Assembly: GCF_033153115.1 (NCBI RefSeq)
Contig: NW_026889779.1
Span: forward strand, 22,010,001 to 22,074,000
Direction: 5' to 3'
Length of the DNA: 64,000 nt
DNA from: Saccostrea echinata
Taxonomy: Eukaryota
Shown here: positions 1 through 43,790 of the stretch, piece after piece
Numbering within the stretch: position 1 is the stretch's first letter
Layout: every line of letters starts with the position of its first letter
Made by a program: the position numbers and the translations under genes
The notes under the pieces: model-generated
The model's database searches: none
Told to the model about the DNA's origin: nothing
Seen by the model: only the letters and a program-made list of their open reading frames with translations

Positions 1-1490
1 TATTTCCAGAATGGTCCTCCTTCATACCATATTCTTTCATCATTTATCAATTGCATATAATCAACTCATATTCAAGCCAATTCCATAATTTTTTTAAAAT
101 TACAACATTTTAGGGCACAAGAAAGCCCAAAACGTACCTTCTTCCTCGTCACAACGTACTTTAAGAAATACAATTATAGTCCTAGAAATCCCCCTAGTTT
201 TCTACCCGTGGATTGAACAGAAGTTCTGATTTCGTGTACCCGGTAATTATGACCCCGTGGAAAACAGTATGTTTACAGTAACAAGAAAACTTGTAAGGTA
301 TATATTAAAGTATCTCTTTTTTATGTACAATGTTTCCAACTTTAATGACTGCAATTTCTGTCGTTATGTTTTAAATTGTTCAATGTTTTAAATTCAACAG
401 TTTCATTAAGTGTTTATAAAATGTCTTTATGGCTAGTGTATACGTCAGTCAAAGGTTTCACAGCATCGTATTTTTATACTTCGATGCATACTATGTAGCA
501 CAGCTATCAATACTTCTATATTATCAACGGAGTGGATTTATTTGTGCTTAAGTACATGTAAATCGTTCGAGAACTATATTTGGCTTTGAATATTATCAGT
601 TCAGATTTTTTTTATCTTTGAGTTTTTCAGCTCATGAGTACAGTAAATGCGAACAAATATACATGTAAAAGTAGGTTAAAAGGAGAATGGCCCGACGATT
701 GAATAATGAAATGACATTCGGACAGAAGAGTGAAACCGAGATGGTATTCTCATCTCAAAGTTGAGAAACCGTTTTTTCCTCAGACACAGTCAATAATATA
801 ATTATCCTCAACAAAAACTGTTGACATAGTACATGTACAAAGTAATTTTAAATGCTTCACTACCGCGAGAATTATTTATTAATTACTCTCTGTGTTGTTT
901 TTGTGATGAAACTGGGCTTTTTTGTAAAATTATAATGAAAGTATAGTTAATTGGACTCGATCGCATACCATGCGTTCAATGTATTTTGTTGTTTTAAGAT
1001 TGTTCAAATGCAGAGAACACACATATCAAAGTAAGTATCTTACGGAGGACCTTCTTATCATTCTTGAGTTTCTTTTCCACAATTTTATTAATAATGTTTT
1101 TTTTCTTTACCGATTTTGTGCACGCGAATTCTCTGAAACAGCTTGCTCGAAACTTTCAGGTCTGGAGAACATCAAAAAATCTAAACTATATTTTTATTTT
1201 GATTTTGTAATTTAGTGGTTTTTGGAGAGCTAGTTTGTCCAAGCCTTTTTAAAAACCAAAACATGGAAACGTGAAGTTTTCAGCGATTATAAAGCAAGTT
1301 ATGTTGATATGAATAACGTAGTTCTTCTCCACTGGAAATGCCAAACGTTGACAACGTTGACGCTCGCTATGCCCCGAAAATAGGTGTATTGAGAATTTTC
1401 ATTTTTTTAACGCATTCTATACAATACAATATTACTTAGATATGTTTTATGAAAACACGTGGAATTGACTGATTGTATGTAATTTTACGA

Positions 1491-1692
1491 GTCTTTCGGA
1501 TGACACCTTAAAAATCGAGGTCCCGTGTCACGGTAGGCCTTTGAACAATGAAGATTCCTAACGGTTAAATAGCACAGTATGCCGGTCCCGCGCGAGTATA
1601 GGTCTAAATTTGAAGCCCTTCATTGGTATATGGTGGCGTTTCTATATGAGTGAAAAATTCTTGAATTGGACGTAAAACAACATACAATCAAT
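1491..1692 (+). mobile_element. Headless copy of the same SINE family (another tail fragment at 10610-10693)
   Basis: Shares GAGGTCCCGTGTC...TCTATATGAGTGAAAAATTC...ACGTAAAACAACATACAATCAAT with the full copies. Confidence 0.8.
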
Positions 1693-2071
1693 AAATCTAT
1701 AATTAACAATATTATTCTATTCGAAGCTAAAAATATTATTTACTGAGGATAAAGAGATTCACAAAAGGGTACTAGTTTATGTTTATCTAAATGAAAATGC
1801 GTCTAACGAATCACTGACCATACTGCATCAGATTGACAGATTATCAATATTATTGGGAGATTTTAGTAAAATAAGTGTTACTGAGGAGAATCGATAGCAA
1901 AAACGTATATTTAATATATCAAGGTCTCTTTAGCCTAGTTCAATAATCATGCGTATACTGCGTTTATTCTTGGGATGATCCTACAAATTTACATATAGCA
2001 TGCCTTTTGTATTTATACTATGTGACACAAATTAACTGCAAAAAAATTATTCTCATATTTTAAACAGGAGA

Positions 2072-5000
2072 ATGTTACCAGAAAATGTAGAGCGTGGTCT
2101 CACATTCATTGTTGGGTGTGTAGGATTAGCTGTTTCCGGTCATTATCAATCCTTTGGAGCTTACAGTAACGCTATCAAGGCTCAGTTCAACTACACACAG
2201 ACTCAAGGTAAATTATCTTTCTATTTCTTAACAATATATTGATTGTACTCAAGGTATTGTTATCGCAAAACTAGTCAGTGTGAATCGAAGATGGAAATTT
2301 GTATCGGTTAACCGGTTACTCGGTCGGAACGATGGTAATCGGTTAGAAATTCTGTTATCAGTTAGTTGTCGGAAAAAATTTAAAAAAAAAATGTATGTAA
2401 ATTTGAACACAATTTCCTTAAAAATCAATAACAAAAATACAAATGAATATTTCTGAATGTACGCATTTTCACCTTTCGATCTAAACCAATTCAGAGATAA
2501 TTAAACCTCTCCTGATTAACTTTGTGTAATTGGTCAGTTTATGAGATGTTAATTGCTGTGTAAACCCTGCCTTGTGTTTCTTAAATGATTTAATAAAATG
2601 ATCGTTGAGTACCACAAACTGATTATAATGTGTATATCATTTCATCTATCCTTTGCAGTTACCTATCAGATTATATTATTAAACAAACATTGTAAATTAA
2701 GAGGTAGTTAAGACTTATTTCTGGTAATAGTGACAATGCAGAATGAACTTGAGTGACATCTAGTGAAAAAATTTTTAATGTGTCTGATCTTTTAGGCAAG
2801 TTTCATGGTTTTCTTAAATTTATTTTTCCATAATAAATATTGCTCTGATAAAACACATAATTTTCCTAACACCTTTACGTTTTGCGATTTGAAAAGCACT
2901 TACATCATAATGTTGATACGATTAACCGATTAAGCGGTCGGAACGTTAACCGATTGGTTATTCCGTATTTGATTGCTATCCCTAGTTTATAGTAATGAAT
3001 GGTGTTTAAAAATGGATTAAGAAACATTGATACAATGAGGATTCTTTTCTCGAATTAAAAAAAAATGTTTCAAAGAATGATAGACAAATATAAATATTCA
3101 TCTCAATTAAGTGTCCATCGTTAGTTGATCTTTAGTATATATGCGTTTATTATATTTTCAGATATTTCACGAAGTAATAATCTGTAATCACAACTTATAT
3201 TTTTATTTAAGAATAAGAATGTTCATAGTACAAAGTCAAATAAAAAACAGTGCTGTTTAGATTGTATTGTATTTATATCTAAAACCGCATGGTTTTCCCC
3301 CAAATATTTCAATGTTTAAATCATGTATACTCAAATAGTAGTTATTAACTTTTAAATAGACATACCTATTTAAGACCTGAATTATTTATGTGTGTAAAAT
3401 CAAAACTTCACCGGCAACATAATCTGTTGCTTTCTTCGATTATATATTTTTTATTTGATGAAATGTGCATAGTTATAAACATAAAATAAAGATACTTTTT
3501 TATTTCCAGTGGAATTTCTTGAAGGTTTTTCAATTTTGGGAATAAATCTCGACCTTCCAGTAGGAATTTTGTATGAAGCATTTGGCGTCAAGTGGATAGC
3601 CTTTGGAGGTTTTCTTTTTGGGACCATTGGATTTATTTTGTTATACAAAACTACGCAAATGCGACCTTTCTACTATACACACTTCTGGTTGCAATGTGTT
3701 TATTATTTCATGACAGGTTTGTTGATAATTCATTAACTGTAAGAAAAGTGAGGATTTTATATCATATTATGATATACAATCTTTATTAAAAATCACAGAT
3801 GTCAAAAACTAAATACTATGATACATGTAATTCCTATTGACTCTTCTTTTACTGACTTGTCGTCTAGAAATTTTCCTTTTCCCTAAACATTTCTATGTCT
3901 TATGTCTTTTAAAAAGGGAAACAGGTTCCCGTGTTAAAATGTGTGTATAGATGCATGCTTATGTGTAAAGGCAAATATCCGATAAACTGGATACCACTTT
4001 CATGGCTGTTACACTCAAAGTCAAATACCTTTCTTCCATCCTAAAGATAACTTTTTTTCAAAAAAAAAAATTCTCCGTTATTTTCTATTTTCAATACAAG
4101 AGGAAATGTGCACACGATAGCCATTAAAATTTATTTTCTTGATTTAGGTTTGAGTGGCTCGTTCATGAGCTTGTCCTGTTTGATCCCAAATATGATCAAC
4201 TATCATCCAAAGCACAGAGGGAAAATAGTCGGCATTCTTTGCGCATGTATAAGTTTTGGACCGGTTATATTTGTTGGAGTTTATGGATCAATATTTGCTA
4301 GGGGTCACATAAAAGATGAGGAAAAGCAGGATCTTTGTGGCTTCTATCTGATGTCGGCAGTTACATTTGGAGTTGCTGGGTGCCTAGGAATTTTATTTTT
4401 GAAGCAGTTAAAGATAAAAATGGATGACGATACGAACGATCTTCTCGACTCAGAGGCACTACTGTCGCCAAGTATTTTCAAACAGCAAAACGATGTCACG
4501 GGACAGAAATTAATTCGTAGACGTGATTTCCATTACGTTTTCTGGGCATTTATATTTTCTACCAGTCTTCTACTTACTTTTCAAAACAACACAGGAACAT
4601 ACCTGAAATCTTTTGGATTAGAAAGCTATATCACCATTTCTGCAACCTTAGTTCCCATTGCTGGTGTCTTCTCCAAATTGTTCGCAGGGGTTTTGTCAGA
4701 TTTCATTTTGCTCAAAGTTCCAAGATCTGGTATTCTCTTCATAATCACCGTCATCCAAACAATATGTCTAATCTTGTCAATATTTCTGTTAGACAAACTC
4801 ATCTTCTTTATTATAGCTGTAATATTTTTTGGATCATCCAATGGTATCTATTTCTCTATAACACCAACAATGGTCAGCGAGTTCTATGGTATGAAATACT
4901 TTGGAAGGAATTATGGTTTCGTGTTACTTGGACAAGCTTTTTGTCATCTTTTTATGCAACAAATATTTGGTACTTTATACGATTTAAATACCGACTCTAG

Positions 5001-36900: not shown

Positions 36901-38716
36901 TGAGCAGATAGCCCACCAATATTTTTCATCTCAATTAGAGATTTTTATCTCTTGATAACGAACGATAGATTTCAAAGATTCTGATGTCAGTGCAAATATT
37001 TGTATGCATGTTTTTTAACATTTTACATGACCAATTCTATTCGGATATATAGCATCGTAGAGATTTCAAATCATATTTATAACAGCTTCAGAATATATGT
37101 TATTTTTTTCAGTAACATGATTCTCCAATATATGTGGTTAGATGTACTATATGTATTATACGGTCAATTAACTACAGCTTTAGTACCCAAAATGTAATTA
37201 GATTAAGTTTCATTGAAGAATTCAATGAAATACCGAGTATGAAGAAAGATAACTCGTATACATTAAAAATTGTGCTGTGCAAATCCCTATCTCACAAGTA
37301 AAAGAGAAGAATTTATGTGGAAAAAAATATTTGTTCCATCTGGTTCACTTGTTCGGGGTGATATTTTAATCGACATTTAATGTATTTAAGTAAATCGCAT
37401 ATATCTCACAGAATGGAATATTATAGGATATTTATTTTAAATAATTTGACATAAAATATTTTTTGGAAAAAATCAATCACCGTTTTCCTGTTTTTATTAT
37501 TATTATTATTATTAAAATCTACTAAAGATGTTTTGTGTGTCTTGGTTTTCATTAAGTCTGAGAGTAAGAAAACTTAAAATGATTGCACTGATATAATTCT
37601 GCTGAATACAGCTATAAAATTCATATCTCATATTCATTTAAAGTTTTCTATTATTTTATTTAAAGGTCAGTTGTATCCAAAATCACAAAAAATCTTTGAT
37701 TTCCATATGCTTTTTCCCATTTGGGCTAAAAATCAAATGTAAAAAATATGTATTTAACAGGGAACTAGGCGAGAGAAAGTTTTATATAATGTTGTTAATT
37801 TTTACAGGGTGGAGGTATGGCAAAATTTACAATATGATAGTTGTTACCAGATTTTAAATTTTGCATATACTTTCTTCCAGAAAATTTTAGATTTACATTA
37901 TAATACTTAAACGAAATACTATACCACATGTATCTCTCTCTATCTTGAAGGGGTTTTAAAACCTTGAAAAGATTATAATGTAATAGTAATTTTATTTTAT
38001 GATCTTTTACAATTTTTCAGTGCATAAATACATGTACTAGTTATTGTTTGTACTCATGTACAACAGTTGTATGTTTAGTTCCTGGGCACATGTTGTAATC
38101 AATCTATTTAAAAAAAAGAAACCTGAAGTATATAATTCCATGTACATTTGTTGATGAATTAGTTTTATTTCGAAATTATTTTTATGAAATAACAACAACA
38201 TATTTTAATACTGTTTTTATGACATGTGGTTCTATTATTTGAAGCATAATATTTCCAGGAACAAAATACACAAATACAATTCTTTAGGCCTATATTGATC
38301 AATACAGAGAAAAATTAGGAAATTAAACGAGACTTACCTTGGTAAAGGCGAAGTTTGATTCCAATTATTGGAGTAAATAAAAGGCACTGTAGAGATAAGG
38401 TGAATAGTACTGCGCAGCCGCCAAGTCATTGCTTCAAAGCTAAAATTTTTTGGGTTGATAGATTTGCAACAAAACATCAAACCCAAATTCATTTCACTAA
38501 TAATTTCAAATAATACATTCACCACCTGCAGGGTGGGAGGGAGGCACCTTATCTCTACAGTGCCTTTTATTTACTCCAATAATTGGAATCAAACTTCGCC
38601 TTTACCAAGGTAAGTCTCGTTTAATTTCCTAATTATTTTTCGTAAACGTCACTTCCGAGATAATGTGAATCTTTAAAGCACAACACAAAAAATTTTTCAA
38701 ACTGAAATCAAATTCT

Positions 38717-39898
38717 TTATTTTAATTTCAAAACAGCATTTGCATACTTATCATCATTCAGCACAGGTTTGTCATAAAACTTTCTGAAGGTTTCGACATT
38801 AGACCAACCTACTTTGGACAAAATATCATCGACAGGAACAAAGTTCTCTTTTGCTTTAGATGCTGATGCAGATCTAACACTATGAGCCTTAAAAATAGTA
38901 GTATCAACACCTGCAGAACACATCACTGTTCTTATCCAACGGGCAACAGTATCTCTTGATACTTCCTTGTGTGGTTGTACATAACTGATAAACAGTGAAT
39001 CACACTTATTTCTAATTCTTGCAGTCCTTGATAAGTATTCACATAAAACAATATATACACAAAGCCTCCTATCTGGAGGATATGATTTCAAAACCATGTC
39101 AGACATACTACTGTTAGGTCTACATGTTTTCAATAAATCACTAAAAGTAAAAACAAAGCTATTTTTTCTTCTCGTCATATTACCAAGTTTCATGCATGAA
39201 ATAGTTTGTACTCGACTTGCACAAATTAAACTAATTAACATAACTAACTTCAGTGTCAAGTCTTTCAAACTTAAGTATTTTACAGGTGACAATTTTCTCA
39301 AATACTTGATAACAATAGATGCATCCCAAGTATGTACATATCGAGATTTTGATGGTCTCAAATTAAAAACACCCTTCATAAATCGTATAACAAGTGGATG
39401 ACATCCAACAGTAAACCCATCAAAAATCAGTCCAACAGAAGATAAAGCCCCTCGGGCAGTATTAATAGCACTATACCCTAAACCTAGGCGAAAAAGATGT
39501 GCTAAAAATTCAATAACAGTTTCTATAGTTGTACAAAATGGATCAATCGATTTTTCACTACAGTACTGAAACCATCTCGTATAAAATGTTTTATATTGTT
39601 TCTTGGTTCCCGACTTCCATGATGCCAAAAGGATCGAGGCTGCTTGATGAGAAATTCCTCGTTTTTGGTACTGCAACCGGACAATCGACATGCCATCAGC
39701 ACTAACGAGTCTTTCAGAGGATGCTGCACATCTGTGCCTGGAAGTGTCAACAGATTGTCCATCACAGGTAAAATCACCGGATGATCCACCAGTTTTTCTA
39801 ACACACGATTGAACCACGGCTGTGTTGGCCACACTGGAGCCACCAGTACACACTCTGCTTGGTCCTGACAAATCTTCCTCACCACACGTCCAATGAGG
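38717..39898 (-). CDS. DIRS ORF3: tyrosine recombinase
   Basis: N-terminal W..GTKKQY/YSAINTARGALS/HPLV.RFMKG block; catalytic R (ASRVQ), HSVR and GWS...TFRKFY. Overlaps the 3' end of ORF2 in another frame. Confidence 0.94.
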   Translation of the reverse strand, partial: PHWTCGEEDLSGPSRVCTGGSSVANTAVVQSCVRKTGGSSGDFTCDGQSVDTSRHRCAASSERLVSADGMSIVRLQYQKRGISHQAASILLASWKSGTKKQYKTFYTRWFQYCSEKSIDPFCTTIETVIEFLAHLFRLGLGYSAINTARGALSSVGLIFDGFTVGCHPLVIRFMKGVFNLRPSKSRYVHTWDASIVIKYLRKLSPVKYLSLKDLTLKLVMLISLICASRVQTISCMKLGNMTRRKNSFVFTFSDLLKTCRPNSSMSDMVLKSYPPDRRLCVYIVLCEYLSRTARIRNKCDSLFISYVQPHKEVSRDTVARWIRTVMCSAGVDTTIFKAHSVRSASASKAKENFVPVDDILSKVGWSNVETFRKFYDKPVLNDDKYANAVLKLK

Positions 39899-41619
39899 CT
39901 GAAAGGAGGATTAAGATAACCATAAATGTTTGCCCATGAAAAACTAAATGCATTAACATAACGGGCATCTGGATCTGGATGCCAAGAACAATATACATCA
40001 ATCTGCTTATTCAACCTTGTTGCAAACAAATCAATTTCAGGTTGTTCCCATCTTAAAACAATTTTATGGAACACAGATTTGCTCAACATCCATTCTATTT
40101 GATCATCAAATTTGCGCGACATCATATCTGCTATCAAATTATCTTTACCAGGAATGTGCCATGCACTTAACCACAGATCCCTATTCATACTCCATAGCCA
40201 AATTTCTTTTGCAAGTTTATCACATTTTTTAGAACTAATACCACCCATGTTATTGATGTAGGAAATAGCTGTGGTATTGTCCATAAATAATTTGACATTT
40301 TTATTTGTTACATCAGAACAAAAGCACTTTAACCCCAAAAAGCAGGCTAATAATTCTAAGTAATTGATATGATTTTCAGATTCATCTGTTGTCCATCTAC
40401 CCCCTGATTTCAATTCATTCATAACAGCACCCCATCCAAGATGAGAAGCATCAGAAGTTATTGTAAGATCATAGGGTTCATGCAAAATTCTTCTAACTGA
40501 TGAAGAAATATTAGAAATCCACCAATCTAATTCTAATTTCATTTCTTTTGTTATGATCATGAAAGCATCATAGTCATGTTGTGATTGTACAAGTGCATCA
40601 GTTTTTGCTCTTTCCATATCACGATAAAACAGCTGACCAAATTCTACTGCTGAAAAACTAGCCACGACCAATCCAATGACCTTTGCAACTTCTCTAATTT
40701 TTTCTCTTGATTTTGTTTGTAATTTTTTACATGCCTCTAAAATAGATTCCTTTCTTTCTTCAGTAAGAGAAACTATCATCAATTCAGAATCAATAACATT
40801 TCCTAAGAAAATGATTTTTGTACTAGGTGTGAGAACAGACTTCTCATAATTGACTACAAACCCTAGACTCTCTACTAGGGCTAAAGTTTCAGAAACATGA
40901 TCTAAACACTCTTTAATACAATTGCCAATCAGTAACGAGTCATCAATATACCCAATAATGACATGTCCTAATCTTCTAAGTGTTGCAAAAACAGGCTTCA
41001 GTAGTTTTGTAAAGAGTCTAGGTGCACTAGCTAACCCTTGAGCGAGACAAGTATACTGATAAATCTTATTTTTCCATATGAATCTAAGAAACTTTCTATG
41101 TTCCTCTGCCACACTGACACTATAGTATGCATTGCTAAAGTCAACACTAGCAAAATAACAACCTTGAGTCACTAAATCAAGAGCACTCTCAAAAGTATCC
41201 ATTTTAAAATGGTGATACACAATGTTTTTGTTAAATTCTTTCAGGTTCAAAATGACTCTATAACTGCCATTCTTTTTAGGTCTAGTGAAAACAGTGGAAA
41301 TGAAACCATCACTAAGGTCTACATTTTCAGACAATTCTTCAATTACATTCATATCTAATAAAGATTCAATTTCTTTGTCAATCACACATGATTCAGCTGA
41401 ACTAAAACGTGGCTCAAAAGGTTTTGAATTTTGTACAGGAATTTTATCATCTTTAAATTCCAAATGACAACCTTTCACAATATCTAATATACTTTTATCT
41501 GATGTTAACTCTTTCCATTCAGAAATGAAATTTTTTAGTACACCTGCTCTAAATTCACATACCTTTTCAACTACTTCTGGAGGCGACTCTGCAAGCCTCT
41601 TCGTTGGTAGTTTTTTGAA
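39523..41619 (-). CDS. DIRS ORF2: reverse transcriptase - RNase H - adenine methyltransferase-like domain
   Basis: RVILNLK, HFKM, QGLASAPRLFTK and YIDD (RT); SDASHLGWG, HINYLEL, DNTTA and HIPGKDN.IAD..SR (RNase H); IDLFAT..PDP..NPPFSLI (MTase). The frame is open from 41619 and includes the conserved FRAG.L..F...W..LTSD segment upstream of the listed GTG at 41478. Confidence 0.95.
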   Translation of the reverse strand, partial: FKKLPTKRLAESPPEVVEKVCEFRAGVLKNFISEWKELTSDKSILDIVKGCHLEFKDDKIPVQNSKPFEPRFSSAESCVIDKEIESLLDMNVIEELSENVDLSDGFISTVFTRPKKNGSYRVILNLKEFNKNIVYHHFKMDTFESALDLVTQGCYFASVDFSNAYYSVSVAEEHRKFLRFIWKNKIYQYTCLAQGLASAPRLFTKLLKPVFATLRRLGHVIIGYIDDSLLIGNCIKECLDHVSETLALVESLGFVVNYEKSVLTPSTKIIFLGNVIDSELMIVSLTEERKESILEACKKLQTKSREKIREVAKVIGLVVASFSAVEFGQLFYRDMERAKTDALVQSQHDYDAFMIITKEMKLELDWWISNISSSVRRILHEPYDLTITSDASHLGWGAVMNELKSGGRWTTDESENHINYLELLACFLGLKCFCSDVTNKNVKLFMDNTTAISYINNMGGISSKKCDKLAKEIWLWSMNRDLWLSAWHIPGKDNLIADMMSRKFDDQIEWMLSKSVFHKIVLRWEQPEIDLFATRLNKQIDVYCSWHPDPDARYVNAFSFSWANIYGYLNPPFSLIGRVVRKICQDQAECVLVAPVWPTQPWFNRVLEKLVDHPVILPVMDNLLTLPGTDVQHPLKDSLVLMACRLSGCSTKNEEFLIKQPRSFWHHGSREPRNNIKHFIRDGFSTVVKNRLIHFVQL

Positions 41620-42710
41620 TCAGATGAGAAGGATGCAGCATTCGAGTAGGATCCACGACCCCTTGCAGCTCCTCGGACAAAGCGTCCACGTGATCGTCCC
41701 CTCATAAAGCGACCACGGAAGCTCCCTCTATATCCGATACCAATTTTGTTGCTGATTTTGGAACAATCTGTGATGTCTTTTACAGTTTTAAGGACATCGT
41801 CACCAAACAAATAGTCTGTATACTTTAAATTATGACTACAAAGGTGAGTATATTCACCCTTCATATCAGGTTTCATAAATTCTCTACGCAACATACACAA
41901 CTGTCTGTTGGCATGCCCCAGCAATGCCAATGATTCCATAGCATTTCCCAAAAGGTCTAAAATCTCGGGATTGTCACACTTACCGAGCAAATAAGTCATT
42001 TTAGTGAGTGCACAAGCACCCTTGATCAACGAAGTCTGAACATTTTGCATCTTCTTATCGGAAGATTTTGTAGTTGGGCTCAAAAAATCCCAAACCATTT
42101 GGTTAGTTTTCACAGTCACTAATGCTGAACAGTTTTCAGGACGATTTGTCGTTTTCAGAAGTTCATTATATCGTTCTTCCTCGATTCCCTCTCGGAACCA
42201 ATCTGTCACGAGATTAGCTAGTTCATCATCAATCGGTTTATCACAAGTCTCTTTAACTTTAAGTTTCTTACCGGCATTGACGTACTTGTTTTCCGTATCA
42301 GTCAGAATCTCGTTTAATGCGCGCTTCCTCGAAGCCGCTTCACCGGAAGTACCCGGTTCGTCCGGGGTATCGTCTTGACGATCTTCATATTCTTGGTAAT
42401 CATAATCATACAGATTTTCTAGCTCTGTCATACGATCGTCTTGTTTCTTTTGATTCTCTTGAATCGCTTTTAATATGTTGAGAATCTCATTCTCGTTATT
42501 TGGCGCGGAACTATCATGTCCTCCGCCATGACCACGAGAACATGTGGAAGTGCCAGTCGAAGTCGACGAACTCGACGACGAACGCAAGTTAGACGGTGTC
42601 TTCTCCGAAGACGATGATTTGTTCGGGGCTTTTTTCTTTCCCTTGACCGGTGCTTTATCATCGTCAGGGTTAGGAACGTCCGCCATGACGCACGTGGTTT
42701 GAACTTTCAA
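41571..42710 (-). CDS. DIRS ORF1, Gag-like protein (first ATG at MADVPNPDD)
   Basis: First ORF of the element. Low-complexity N-terminus, coiled-coil-like segment, RPENC..L....N..VW and YLFGDD motifs, RG-rich basic C-terminus. Confidence 0.85.
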   Translation of the reverse strand: MKVQTTCVMADVPNPDDDKAPVKGKKKAPNKSSSSEKTPSNLRSSSSSSTSTGTSTCSRGHGGGHDSSAPNNENEILNILKAIQENQKKQDDRMTELENLYDYDYQEYEDRQDDTPDEPGTSGEAASRKRALNEILTDTENKYVNAGKKLKVKETCDKPIDDELANLVTDWFREGIEEERYNELLKTTNRPENCSALVTVKTNQMVWDFLSPTTKSSDKKMQNVQTSLIKGACALTKMTYLLGKCDNPEILDLLGNAMESLALLGHANRQLCMLRREFMKPDMKGEYTHLCSHNLKYTDYLFGDDVLKTVKDITDCSKISNKIGIGYRGSFRGRFMRGRSRGRFVRGAARGRGSYSNAASFSSDSKNYQRRGLQSRLQK

Positions 42711-43790
42711 AACCGATGAAAAAATATCTGACCACGTCAGACAAAATCGCCCCCGAAAACTGATCTGACCACGTCAGAAAAGATAATGAACTCTGAAAAA
42801 GTTCTAAGAGTATATTGACCTCGTCAATATGTAAAAATATATCAAAAATGATCGAGCAAGTAAGACCACGTCTACTCGCTCCGGCTACTTGCAGTTCAAT
42901 GACTTGGCGGCTGCGCAGTACTATTCACATTATCTCGGAAGTGACGTTTACGAAAAATAATCGTGAATATATCTAAACAATTAAATGCTTTCTTTGGTTA
43001 ACGATGTTAATACGGGAACTAATGTTGCAGCTGTTGCAGAAAAAAATGCATAACCCGTACTGACAAAGAAAGAAAGATATTTTATTGTTTATATTTATAC
43101 ATGTATCTGTACAAATAATCATCTAAACAAGGATTAAGTAGATTAAATAATGTATTATTGATATTTACGTCATTGTACGTTTCATTGATGGAACAGCCAC
43201 TATACTGTACATGTGATATGCTTAGCGGTGTTTACTGACTGATGGTTTTCATAAGAAATATAGGGGATAATATTCAGTGGCTGAAAATGTAAATTGACTA
43301 TAACTGAATGACACACAAAATCAGTCGATGCTTAAAATTAAATTCAAATGTATAAAATTTTATTAACTTTCGAAATTAACTTTATGGACACAGAATTTTA
43401 TTCCTTGAGTTGAAAAAGCATATTGGACAAGAGTACCGAATCTAAAAATATTCAGAATTATTGCAATTAAGCATGACAACCATATTTTTTTTATCTTTGT
43501 CAAATCTGGCAAAACCATCATTCTATCATATTTTAATGTTTCCAATATATTAAAAAAACAATTGCATTTCAATAGGCCTATAGATCTTTCTGTTTCTTTA
43601 TTGAAATATCTTAGTTGTTTTGTGTGATAACAGATAACGATATCAATTTTGTGCGACACCGACACTTGCGTTATCTTAAACCTTTAGGAATGAAAAATTG
43701 ATTTAACCGATTATCTGGAATACTGTGATCGAGTGTATTTTGTTCTGTGAATGTAGTTTTTTTTACTTCCGTATTGGTATATTTTGTTTC

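What the first reader, a model, noticed from the sequence alone, without database searches (positions are those of the whole stretch)
39899..41562. Cryptic 1664-nt intron that swaps RT-RNaseH-MTase for the recombinase, in frame
Seen (- strand): a donor AAG|GTATGT at 41562, just after the gag stop and phase 0 in the pol frame. An acceptor CTTAATCCTCCTTTCAG| ends at 39899 and is encoded by the MTase NPPFS codons. The next base (39898) is codon position 1 of the YR frame. That frame is open from only 12 nt upstream of this point (TAA at 39913-39911), well ahead of the first YR ATG. Inference: one transcript gives Gag, Gag-Pol (frameshift, unspliced) and Gag-linker-YR (frameshift plus splice). This would explain the long pol/YR overlap and would package both enzymes via Gag. 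It is the best candidate for an undescribed system in this window. Phase agreement alone has a 1-in-3 chance; the added support is that the open frame begins at the acceptor.
Basis: partly seen in the sequence, partly recalled or inferred. Interest (0 to 1): 0.85.

Follow-up and report, generated by a model that had tools for sequence, protein, structure and literature searches.

The report
Spliced gag-recombinase mRNA in oyster DIRS
A DIRS retrotransposon in an oyster genome really does splice out its reverse-transcriptase block, joining the end of gag in frame to the tyrosine recombinase; the same layout recurs in dozens of related families, which would explain how DIRS elements express their recombinase.

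Summary
The predicted junction 41563^39898 (1664 nt skipped, GT..AG on the minus strand) appears in one raw oligo-dT RNA-seq read. It also appears in a 1418-nt contig from a second study. The joined word is absent from the 923-Mb genome, while the unspliced donor word occurs 9 times.

I compared about 75 DIRS families (41-64% amino-acid identity) from this genome, metagenomes and contaminated MAGs:
- The best 5' splice site near the gag stop is phase 0 in the pol frame in 56 of 66 families.
- 52 families have AG at the PPF|S codon, and in 50 of them the recombinase (YR) frame is open from the next base onward. Only 2 of 17 families without that AG are open there.
- Families without that AG have a strong in-phase acceptor elsewhere, right where their YR frame opens.
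- A slippery heptamer lies in the gag/pol overlap in 54 of 59 families. The window's pol/YR overlap has none.

Shown: a real, conserved alternative intron. Inferred from conserved frame continuity, not shown: translation as a Gag-linker-YR fusion through the same -1 frameshift. I found no prior description in the paper library. The scan holds no earlier report of this on other DNA. I class it as a new variant of a known kind and rate its interest as high.

The parts
38311..42961 (-). Full DIRS1-like element (gag / RT-RNaseH-MTase / tyrosine recombinase, inverted terminal repeats and internal complementary region)
   Evidence: Full-length genomic copies align to query positions 40-4690 of window:38250-43000:-. 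Inverted repeats pair 38303-38670 with 42897-42961. Pfam hits: RVT_1, weak Dam, Phage_integrase.
41571..42686 (-). gag ORF (ATG 42686 to stop TAG 41573-41571), 371 aa
   Evidence: Translation, ORF list. No Pfam hit. 30-34% identical to the N-terminal parts of gag-pol fusion proteins of other families.
41610..41616 (-). -1 frameshift slippery heptamer A_AAA_AAC in the gag frame; the pol frame opens one codon upstream (stop TGA 41622-41620)
   Evidence: Sequence and frames. A canonical heptamer lies in the gag frame of the gag/pol overlap in 54 of 59 families: AAAAAAC 25, TTTTTTA 22, TTTTTTG 6.
41560..41565 (-). 5' splice site AAG|GTA(TGT): exon 1 ends at 41563, intron starts at 41562, 8 nt after the gag stop, phase 0 in the pol frame
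   Evidence: Sequence. Junction in reads. Exact in 8 near-identical copies, with one mismatch in a ninth. Rank 2 of 299 GT sites. A phase-0 donor is conserved in 56 of 66 families.
39899..41562 (-). 1664-nt alternative intron that contains almost all of RT-RNaseH and the MTase up to motif NPPF
   Evidence: read laying joint 39898<->41563, skips 1664, CT..AC on the plus strand = GT..AG on the minus strand, in X24 (raw RNA read) and X1 (contig). X1 depth: intron 8.9 falling to 0, against exons 16.6 and 27.
39523..41619 (-). pol frame (RT, RNase H, Dam-like MTase), 698 codons open, -1 relative to gag
   Evidence: Translation. Pfam RVT_1 3e-21 and Dam 5e-4. 1188 homologues at E<=1e-20.
39899..39915 (-). 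3' splice site CTTAATCCTCCTTTCAG|, overprinted on MTase codons L-N-P-P-F-S
   Evidence: Sequence. Junction. Rank 2 of 296 AG sites. AG at this codon in 52 of 69 families, linked to opening of the YR frame (Fisher p=3e-11).
39911..39913 (-). Last stop (TAA) in the YR frame, 12 nt upstream of the acceptor
   Evidence: Translation. In other families the last stop lies 0-30 nt upstream in most cases, often the TAG made by the acceptor AG itself.
38717..39898 (-). Exon 2 coding part: 69-codon Ser/Gly-rich linker overprinted on the MTase C-terminus (39898-39692), then the tyrosine recombinase (first ATG 39691; stop at 38719-38717)
   Evidence: Translation. Pfam Phage_integrase. GC rises to 0.48-0.50 at 39600-39900. 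The YR frame has 0 stops in the 68 codons after the acceptor in 52 of 52 families, while the other alternative frame has a mean of 5.8 and is never open.

Best explanation
The element is a young, multi-copy DIRS1-like retrotransposon of an oyster (Saccostrea). Its full-length sense RNA is alternatively spliced. The unspliced RNA encodes Gag and, through a -1 ribosomal frameshift at A_AAA_AAC (41616-41610), Gag-RT/RNaseH/MTase. A canonical GT..AG intron (41562-39899) removes RT-RNaseH-MTase. It joins the short pol-frame stretch that follows the slippery site, 17 codons after the slippery heptamer, directly to the recombinase frame at its codon position 1. The spliced subgenomic mRNA therefore still makes Gag, whose stop lies 8 nt before the junction. 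After the same -1 frameshift it makes Gag-linker-tyrosine recombinase. The long pol/YR ORF overlap exists because exon 2 begins inside the MTase coding region, with the acceptor written in the PPF|S codons. Shown: the splice junction in RNA, its absence from genomic DNA, and conservation of donor, acceptor and frame continuity across many families. Inferred: translation across the junction as a Gag fusion, and any role in delivering the recombinase into particles.
For: RNA:
- Joint 39898<->41563 (skips 1664, GT..AG on the sense strand) is in one raw oligo-dT RNA-seq read (X24, 41 nt on the short side).
- It is also in X1 contig 3 (1418 nt, 42952-41563 then 39898-39871, depth 16.6).
- In X1, exon 2 has depth 27, close to the sum of the spliced branch (16.6) and the unspliced branch (8.9). 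Intron depth fades to 0 toward its 5' end.
- None of the X24 reads lies in the intron.

DNA: the junction 34-mer has 0 hits in the genome, while the unspliced donor 34-mer has 9.

Comparative, within the genome: families L028/L029 and L018 (about 50% aa identity) keep GAG|GTTAGT or CAG|GTAAGT at the gag stop, plus Y-tract-TTTTAG| at PPF|S. There the YR-frame stop is the acceptor's own TAG.

Comparative, about 75 families:
- The best donor is phase 0 in 56 of 66 families, median 5.0 bits against -0.27 in 649 control windows.
- The YR frame is open from the AG in 50 of 52 families that have it, against 2 of 17 without it.
- Families lacking that AG have relocated in-phase acceptors exactly where their YR frame opens.
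- An unbiased search for the best 3' splice site is in YR phase 0 in 59 of 68 families, against 27% of controls.
- 40 of 48 AG-families have an in-frame donor/acceptor pair, and the gag stop lies 5-53 nt upstream of the donor in all 40.

Fusion:
- The first YR-frame ATG lies 519-666 nt after the acceptor in six families.
- In families with in-frame gag-pol, the plausible donor is still phase 0.
- A slippery heptamer is conserved in the gag/pol overlap in 54 of 59 families.
Against: - Direct RNA support is thin: one raw read and one short-sided (28 nt) contig junction.
- X1's library type is only guessed to be RNA.
- X23 shows intron reads and no junction read.
- There is no protein or ribosome evidence for a Gag-YR fusion.
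- Many families have an ATG 12-81 nt after the acceptor, so independent initiation is not excluded.
- No significant frameshift-stimulating RNA structure was found after the slip site.
- Hosts of the metagenomic families are unknown and the families are not phylogenetically independent. Ser AGY and the -1 frame relation could be partly inherited rather than selected.
- 8 of 48 AG-families have a best donor that is not in phase 0. Most of these are ambiguous overlapping sites.
Confidence: 0.7

Rival explanations
1. The splice is real, but the recombinase is not fused to Gag. The spliced mRNA brings the YR ORF close to the 5' end, and YR is translated on its own by reinitiation after the gag stop, leaky scanning, or initiation at the first in-frame ATG (39691).
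For: The gag stop lies only 8 nt before the junction, and the first YR ATG is 207 nt after it. Many families have an ATG 12-81 nt after the acceptor. The conserved YR similarity starts near that ATG.
Against: Independent initiation needs no frame continuity, yet donor phase 0 and acceptor phase 0 are each kept in about 85% of families, even where the acceptor has moved. The YR frame is kept stop-free from the acceptor in 52 of 52 families, well upstream of the ATGs. Six families have no ATG for 519-666 nt.
Confidence: 0.2
2. The recombinase is made mainly from unspliced RNA, as Gag-Pol-YR through a second -1 frameshift in the 373-nt pol/YR overlap or from an internal promoter. The junction reads are rare cryptic splicing without function.
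For: YR is in the -1 frame relative to pol in 69 of 72 families, the same offset as gag to pol. Junction support is only one read plus one contig.
Against: There is no canonical slippery heptamer in the window's pol/YR overlap. Only 21 of 56 families have any, with no common type or position, against 54 of 59 for gag/pol. A frameshift does not need or explain strong conserved 5' and 3' splice sites, nor a YR frame that opens exactly at the acceptor. In X1 the spliced branch is about twice as deep as the unspliced branch.
Confidence: 0.06
3. The junction is not RNA splicing. It comes from pol-deleted DNA copies in some individuals, or from reverse-transcriptase template switching during library preparation.
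For: X1's library type is not on record, and its contig 1 runs into unlike flank sequence. The junction shares 2 nt (AG) on both sides.
Against: The joined word is absent from the 923-Mb assembly. The same junction occurs in two studies, one of them a declared oligo-dT RNA-seq library. The ends are canonical GT..AG at the two best-scoring sites in the coding part of the element. A 2-nt overlap is what AG|GT...AG| gives by itself. Conservation of the sites across families cannot come from a library artefact.
Confidence: 0.03

Closest known systems
DIRS1-like tyrosine-recombinase retrotransposons (DIRS order), as surveyed by Piednoel et al. 2011 (PMC3266345)
   Same: Gag, RT/RNase H/Dam-like MTase and YR genes, inverted terminal repeats with an internal complementary region, and a 'long ORF overlap' between pol and YR, reported in half of 28 elements.
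   Different: The reviews I read (PMC3266345, PMC9210276, PMC7192593) give no expression mechanism for the YR and mention no endogenous intron. Here the overlap is explained by a splice acceptor inside the MTase codons.
Retroviral and LTR-retrotransposon subgenomic spliced mRNAs (retroviral env mRNA; foamy-virus pol mRNA; Drosophila copia gag mRNA; gypsy env) - from my own knowledge
   Same: One genomic RNA serves unspliced for Gag/Gag-Pol and as replication template. An alternatively spliced form changes which downstream gene is expressed.
   Different: Here the splice swaps one enzymatic module (RT-RH-MT) for another (YR) behind the same Gag and, by inference, behind the same frameshift site. 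The acceptor is overprinted on a catalytic-motif codon of the removed gene. The element class is DIRS, which has no protease or DDE integrase.
Gag-Pol -1 programmed ribosomal frameshifting of retroviruses (A_AAA_AAC type, e.g. the MMTV/HTLV gag-pro sites) - from my own knowledge
   Same: A canonical X_XXY_YYZ heptamer in the gag frame just before the gag stop, with the pol frame opening immediately upstream.
   Different: The frameshift product would have two alternative C-terminal halves, depending on splicing. No convincing downstream stimulatory structure was found.

Membership tests
DIRS1-like retrotransposon (DIRS order) | Encodes a tyrosine recombinase instead of a DDE integrase | tested here: met
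   Pfam PF00589 Phage_integrase, E=4.8e-7, 30.2 bits against a cut-off of 27.1, on window:38720-39910:-.
DIRS1-like retrotransposon (DIRS order) | RT/RNase H pol with a Dam-like methyltransferase domain downstream | tested here: met
   RVT_1 at 3e-21. The Dam hit is only 20.2 bits, below the 28.1 cut-off, but the motif [N/F]PPFS is present in 105 of 120 homologues, several of which carry PF05869.
DIRS1-like retrotransposon (DIRS order) | Inverted terminal repeats plus an internal complementary region near the 3' end | tested here: met
   Inverted pairs 38632-38670/42923-42961 (100%), 38378-38431/42897-42950 (89%) and 38303-38402/38545-38644 (96%). The exact circle junction was not mapped.
DIRS1-like retrotransposon (DIRS order) | Integration without target-site duplication | not tested
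   Flanks of the copies were not compared.
Retroelement with an alternatively spliced subgenomic mRNA | Canonical intron within the genomic RNA, with junction reads in RNA and the joined form absent from DNA | tested here: met
   GT..AG joint in X24 and X1. 0 genomic hits for the junction word against 9 for the unspliced word.
Retroelement with an alternatively spliced subgenomic mRNA | Spliced and unspliced forms coexist | tested here: met
   X1 has both branches at the acceptor (depth 16.6 and 8.9). X23 has intron reads.
Gag-fusion expression by -1 programmed frameshifting | Slippery heptamer in the zero frame inside the overlap, with the -1 frame open from there | tested here: met
   A_AAA_AAC at 41616-41610 in the gag frame, with the pol frame open from 41619. 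Conserved in 54 of 59 families.
Gag-fusion expression by -1 programmed frameshifting | Frameshifted fusion protein actually made (Gag-Pol, Gag-YR) | not testable with these tools
   No proteomic or ribosome-profiling data could be reached.

The most novel reading that the evidence does not exclude
Splicing combined with frameshifting is the general, ancient expression strategy of DIRS1-like elements. Gag acts as a common N-terminal carrier, and alternative splicing decides whether the frameshifted ribosome adds the replication module (RT-RH-MT) or the integration module (YR). The splice acceptor is overprinted on, and sometimes migrates away from, the MTase PPF|S codons. This would account for the unexplained 'long ORF overlap' across the whole superfamily.
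Probability: 0.5. Interest if true: 0.85.

Novelty: new variant of a known kind. Interest (0 to 1): 0.8.

Why it matters
How DIRS elements express their tyrosine recombinase, and why pol and YR overlap by hundreds of bases in about half of them, has been described but not explained (PMC3266345). A conserved alternative intron gives a concrete, testable answer. It extends retrovirus-like subgenomic splicing to the third major class of retrotransposons. It is also a clear case of a splice site overprinted on a catalytic-motif codon, and of one frameshift site serving two alternative fusion proteins. In practice, TE annotation pipelines that treat DIRS as intron-less ORFs would mis-model the recombinase, and RNA-seq quantification of DIRS activity should separate the two isoforms.

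Tried and rejected
I used only the 30 loci.
I used the search for related loci instead.
- Folding the RNA after the slippery site gave only a 5-bp hairpin, no better than shuffles (z -0.95 and +1.25). I claim no frameshift stimulator.
- A pol-to-YR second frameshift was considered and rejected for lack of conserved slippery sites.
- A DNA deletion copy was rejected.
- Conservation of Ser=AGY alone was rejected as evidence, because switching between AGY and TCN is hard under purifying selection. I relied on frame opening, relocated acceptors and donor statistics instead.
- Literature searches for DIRS splicing or subgenomic RNA found only engineered marker introns (PMC7192593). Poulter & Butler 2015 is not held, and the Goodwin & Poulter papers, which I did not look up, were not seen either.
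- The exons were analysed separately by reference. The only joined string used was the 34-nt junction word searched in the window's own genome.

Full report
**What is in the window.** The region 38311-42961 on the minus strand is a complete DIRS1-like retrotransposon.
- gag runs from ATG 42686 to TAG 41573-41571, 371 aa.
- A 698-codon pol frame runs 41619-39523. It has RVT_1 (3e-21) and a weak Dam-like methyltransferase match.
- A tyrosine-recombinase (YR) frame is open from 39910 to 38717, with a Phage_integrase hit.
- Inverted terminal and internal complementary repeats are present.
- The pol protein is 98-99% identical to NCBI proteins of Saccostrea cucullata, so the genome is that oyster or a very close relative.
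- The 923-Mb assembly holds about nine copies that are 99-100% identical, plus several families at 64-79% nucleotide identity.

**Check of the observation.** Every coordinate in the finding is right.
- Exon 1 would end at 41563 (…TTGAAAAG), 8 nt after the gag stop. The intron begins GTATGT at 41562, and 41563 is the third base of a pol-frame codon.
- The intron ends …CTTAATCCTCCTTTCAG at 39899. That AG is the first two bases of the Ser codon of NPPFS.
- Base 39898 is codon position 1 of the YR frame.
- The YR frame's last stop is TAA at 39913-39911, and its first ATG is at 39691.
- On the sense strand of the element the donor ranks 2nd of 299 GT sites and the acceptor 2nd of 296 AG sites with simple splice-site matrices. 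The only better sites are in the 3' non-coding repeats.
- GC jumps from about 0.33 to 0.48-0.50 at 39600-39900, as expected for a doubly coding stretch.
- I also found that the pol frame opens at 41619, one codon before a canonical slippery heptamer A_AAA_AAC (41616-41610) in the gag frame.

**Direct RNA evidence.** The look-up of sequencing runs gave 24 runs. I laid two raw oligo-dT RNA-seq runs (X23, X24) and two contig sets (X4, X1) on window:38250-43000. The joints table lists 39898<->41563, 'skips 1664', with ends CT..AC on the plus strand. That is GT..AG on the sense strand, exactly the predicted junction.
- It occurs in one raw X24 read, with 41 nt on the shorter side.
- It occurs in X1 contig 3 (1418 nt), which covers 42952-41563 and continues at 39898-39871.
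- At the acceptor the X1 graph branches as a splice junction should. Exon 2 has depth 27. The unspliced branch (39871-40564) has 8.9 and the spliced branch 16.6.
- X1 intron depth falls from 8.9 to 0 toward its 5' end, while exon 1 stays at 16.6.
- None of the nine X24 reads lies in the intron. X23 does have intron reads, so unspliced or antisense RNA also exists.

Weak points: there is only one read and one contig, and X1's library type is a guess. Its small contig total (75 M letters for a 923-Mb genome) and its depth pattern fit RNA.

**Not a DNA form.** The 34-nt junction word has no match in the genome at up to 2 mismatches. The corresponding unspliced donor word has nine matches. The two nucleotides shared at the joint are simply the AG of AG|GT…AG|.

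**Comparative test within the genome.** I examined two other families at about 50% amino-acid identity.
- L028/L029 keep A_AAA_AAC in the gag frame. They have a donor GAG|GTTAGT just after the gag stop, in phase 0 of pol. Their acceptor is TTTTTCCACCTTTTAG| at PPF|S. There the last YR-frame stop is the TAG formed by the acceptor AG itself, so the YR frame opens on the first base of exon 2.
- L018, a decayed copy, has CAG|GTAAGT at the gag stop and TTTTTCCTCCTTTTAG| with the same TAG arrangement.

**Comparative test across families.** I therefore used a pol alignment (A1) to fetch 80 metagenome loci and 21 loci from contaminated MAGs, at 33-51% identity (nearly all 41-51%). Together with the window and L028 they cluster into 75 families at 80% nucleotide identity. 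One representative per family gave these results:
- YR is in the -1 frame relative to pol in 69 of 72 families.
- 52 families have AG at the codon after PPF. In 50 of them the frame starting at the next base stays open through the whole recombinase.
- Of 17 families without that AG (Cys TGY, Ser TCT, Ala), only 2 are open there (Fisher p=3e-11).
- The last upstream stop is mostly 0-30 nt from the acceptor.
- In the 68 codons after the acceptor the YR frame has no stop in 52 of 52 families. The third frame averages 5.8 stops and is never open.
- Families lacking the PPF|S AG have a strong pyrimidine-tract YAG in YR phase 0 within about 24 nt of where their YR frame opens. Examples: cccttattcttcctag| at +137, tctgtcttatctctag| at +14, and …CTTGCAG| at +209 and +215. 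So the acceptor can move while the layout is kept. This argues against the acceptor being a by-product of the PPFS codons.
- An unbiased search for the best 3' splice site between -60 and +260 of the Ser codon lands in YR phase 0 in 59 of 68 families. The figure is 27% in 240 control windows inside pol. Median scores are 6.2 against 1.3.
- The best 5' splice site in the 150 nt before the conserved pol N-terminal motif is in pol phase 0 in 56 of 66 families, against 37% of 649 control windows inside pol. Median score is 5.0 bits against -0.27, and 77% against 3.9% reach 4 bits or more. Typical sites are CAG|GTGAGT, AAG|GTGAGT and GAG|GTAAGT.
- 40 of 48 AG-families have an in-frame donor/acceptor pair. 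In all 40 the gag stop lies 5-53 nt upstream of the donor.
- Most exceptions are families with gag and pol in one frame. They carry two overlapping donors (AAG GTG AGG TAA GC), and the phase-0 donor would fuse Gag to YR with no frameshift.

Caveats: the hosts of these contigs are unknown, the families share ancestry, and my splice matrices are generic.

**How the recombinase is probably translated.** Continuity of the pol frame in exon 1 with the YR frame in exon 2 is conserved even where the sites have moved. That makes sense only if ribosomes read across the junction.
- Because the gag stop is in exon 1, this reading requires the same -1 frameshift that makes Gag-Pol.
- A canonical heptamer sits in the gag frame of the gag/pol overlap in 54 of 59 families: AAAAAAC 25, TTTTTTA 22, TTTTTTG 6.
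- By contrast, only 21 of 56 families have any heptamer in the roughly 373-nt pol/YR overlap, with no common type or place, and the window has none. A second frameshift from pol into YR is therefore unlikely.
- Six families have no ATG in the YR frame for 519-666 nt after the acceptor, which argues against independent initiation there.
- The 69-codon stretch between the acceptor and the first ATG in the window is Ser/Gly/Thr-rich. It looks like an overprinted linker (inference).
- I could not test translation. No significant stimulatory RNA fold follows the slip site.
The exons were handled separately by reference.

**Comparison with what is known.** Alternative splicing to make subgenomic mRNAs is standard in retroviruses and occurs in some LTR retrotransposons (own knowledge). 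For DIRS elements, the papers I could read describe three overlapping ORFs and a 'long ORF overlap' in half of 28 elements. They give no mechanism and do not mention the words splice or intron (PMC3266345; PMC9210276). The only splicing in the DIRS-1 mobilisation study is of an engineered marker intron (PMC7192593). Six full-text searches found nothing else. Older subscription reviews were not seen: Poulter & Butler 2015 is not held, and I did not look up the Goodwin & Poulter papers. Prior mention therefore cannot be excluded. The scan's own notes hold no earlier report of this on other DNA. One note (s1-818054) describes a copy with pol and YR fused by an extra base, like protein P0069.

**Verdict.** I put about 0.9 on a real, conserved alternative intron. 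I put about 0.7 on the full model including the Gag-linker-YR fusion via frameshift. It is a new variant of a known kind of retroelement gene expression, and of high interest for transposon biology.

Noticed in passing
window 41610-41622 (- strand): Canonical -1 frameshift site A_AAA_AAC in the gag frame, with the pol frame opening one codon upstream. The same arrangement is seen in 54 of 59 related families (AAAAAAC, TTTTTTA, TTTTTTG). No significant downstream RNA structure was found.
   Followed up: yes
window 38372-38648: X1 contig 1 skips 275 nt here (ends GT..AC, not canonical) inside the 3' inverted-repeat/ICR region. It then runs more than 255 nt into sequence unlike the window. This may be a variant copy, read-through transcription, or a rearrangement tied to the terminal repeats.
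   Followed up: no
L042:1060-1095, L048:1415-1450, L053: Families with gag and pol in one continuous frame carry AAG GTG AGG TAA GC, which holds two overlapping 5' splice sites. The phase-0 site would give a Gag-YR fusion without any frameshift.
   Followed up: partly
40 families, donor regions: The gag stop codon always lies 5-53 nt upstream of the donor. That is within the distance at which a stop before an exon junction usually escapes nonsense-mediated decay.
   Followed up: partly
L111-L131 (genome contigs): Complete DIRS elements sit on contigs binned into bacterial and archaeal MAGs (Sedimenticola sp., Anaerolineae, Bacteroidota, Methanomassiliicoccaceae). This is almost certainly host-animal contamination of the bins.
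   Followed up: no
   Followed up: partly
window 39600-39900 and 41550-41775: GC content rises from about 0.33 to 0.48-0.50 in the two stretches where two reading frames overlap (pol/YR and gag/pol).
   Followed up: partly
window 42718-42784: Two 30-nt direct repeats (83% identical, 37 nt apart) lie in the 5' leader just upstream of the gag ATG. Each contains the palindrome GACCACGTCAG-like core. Another first-stage note flags hairpins here.
   Followed up: no
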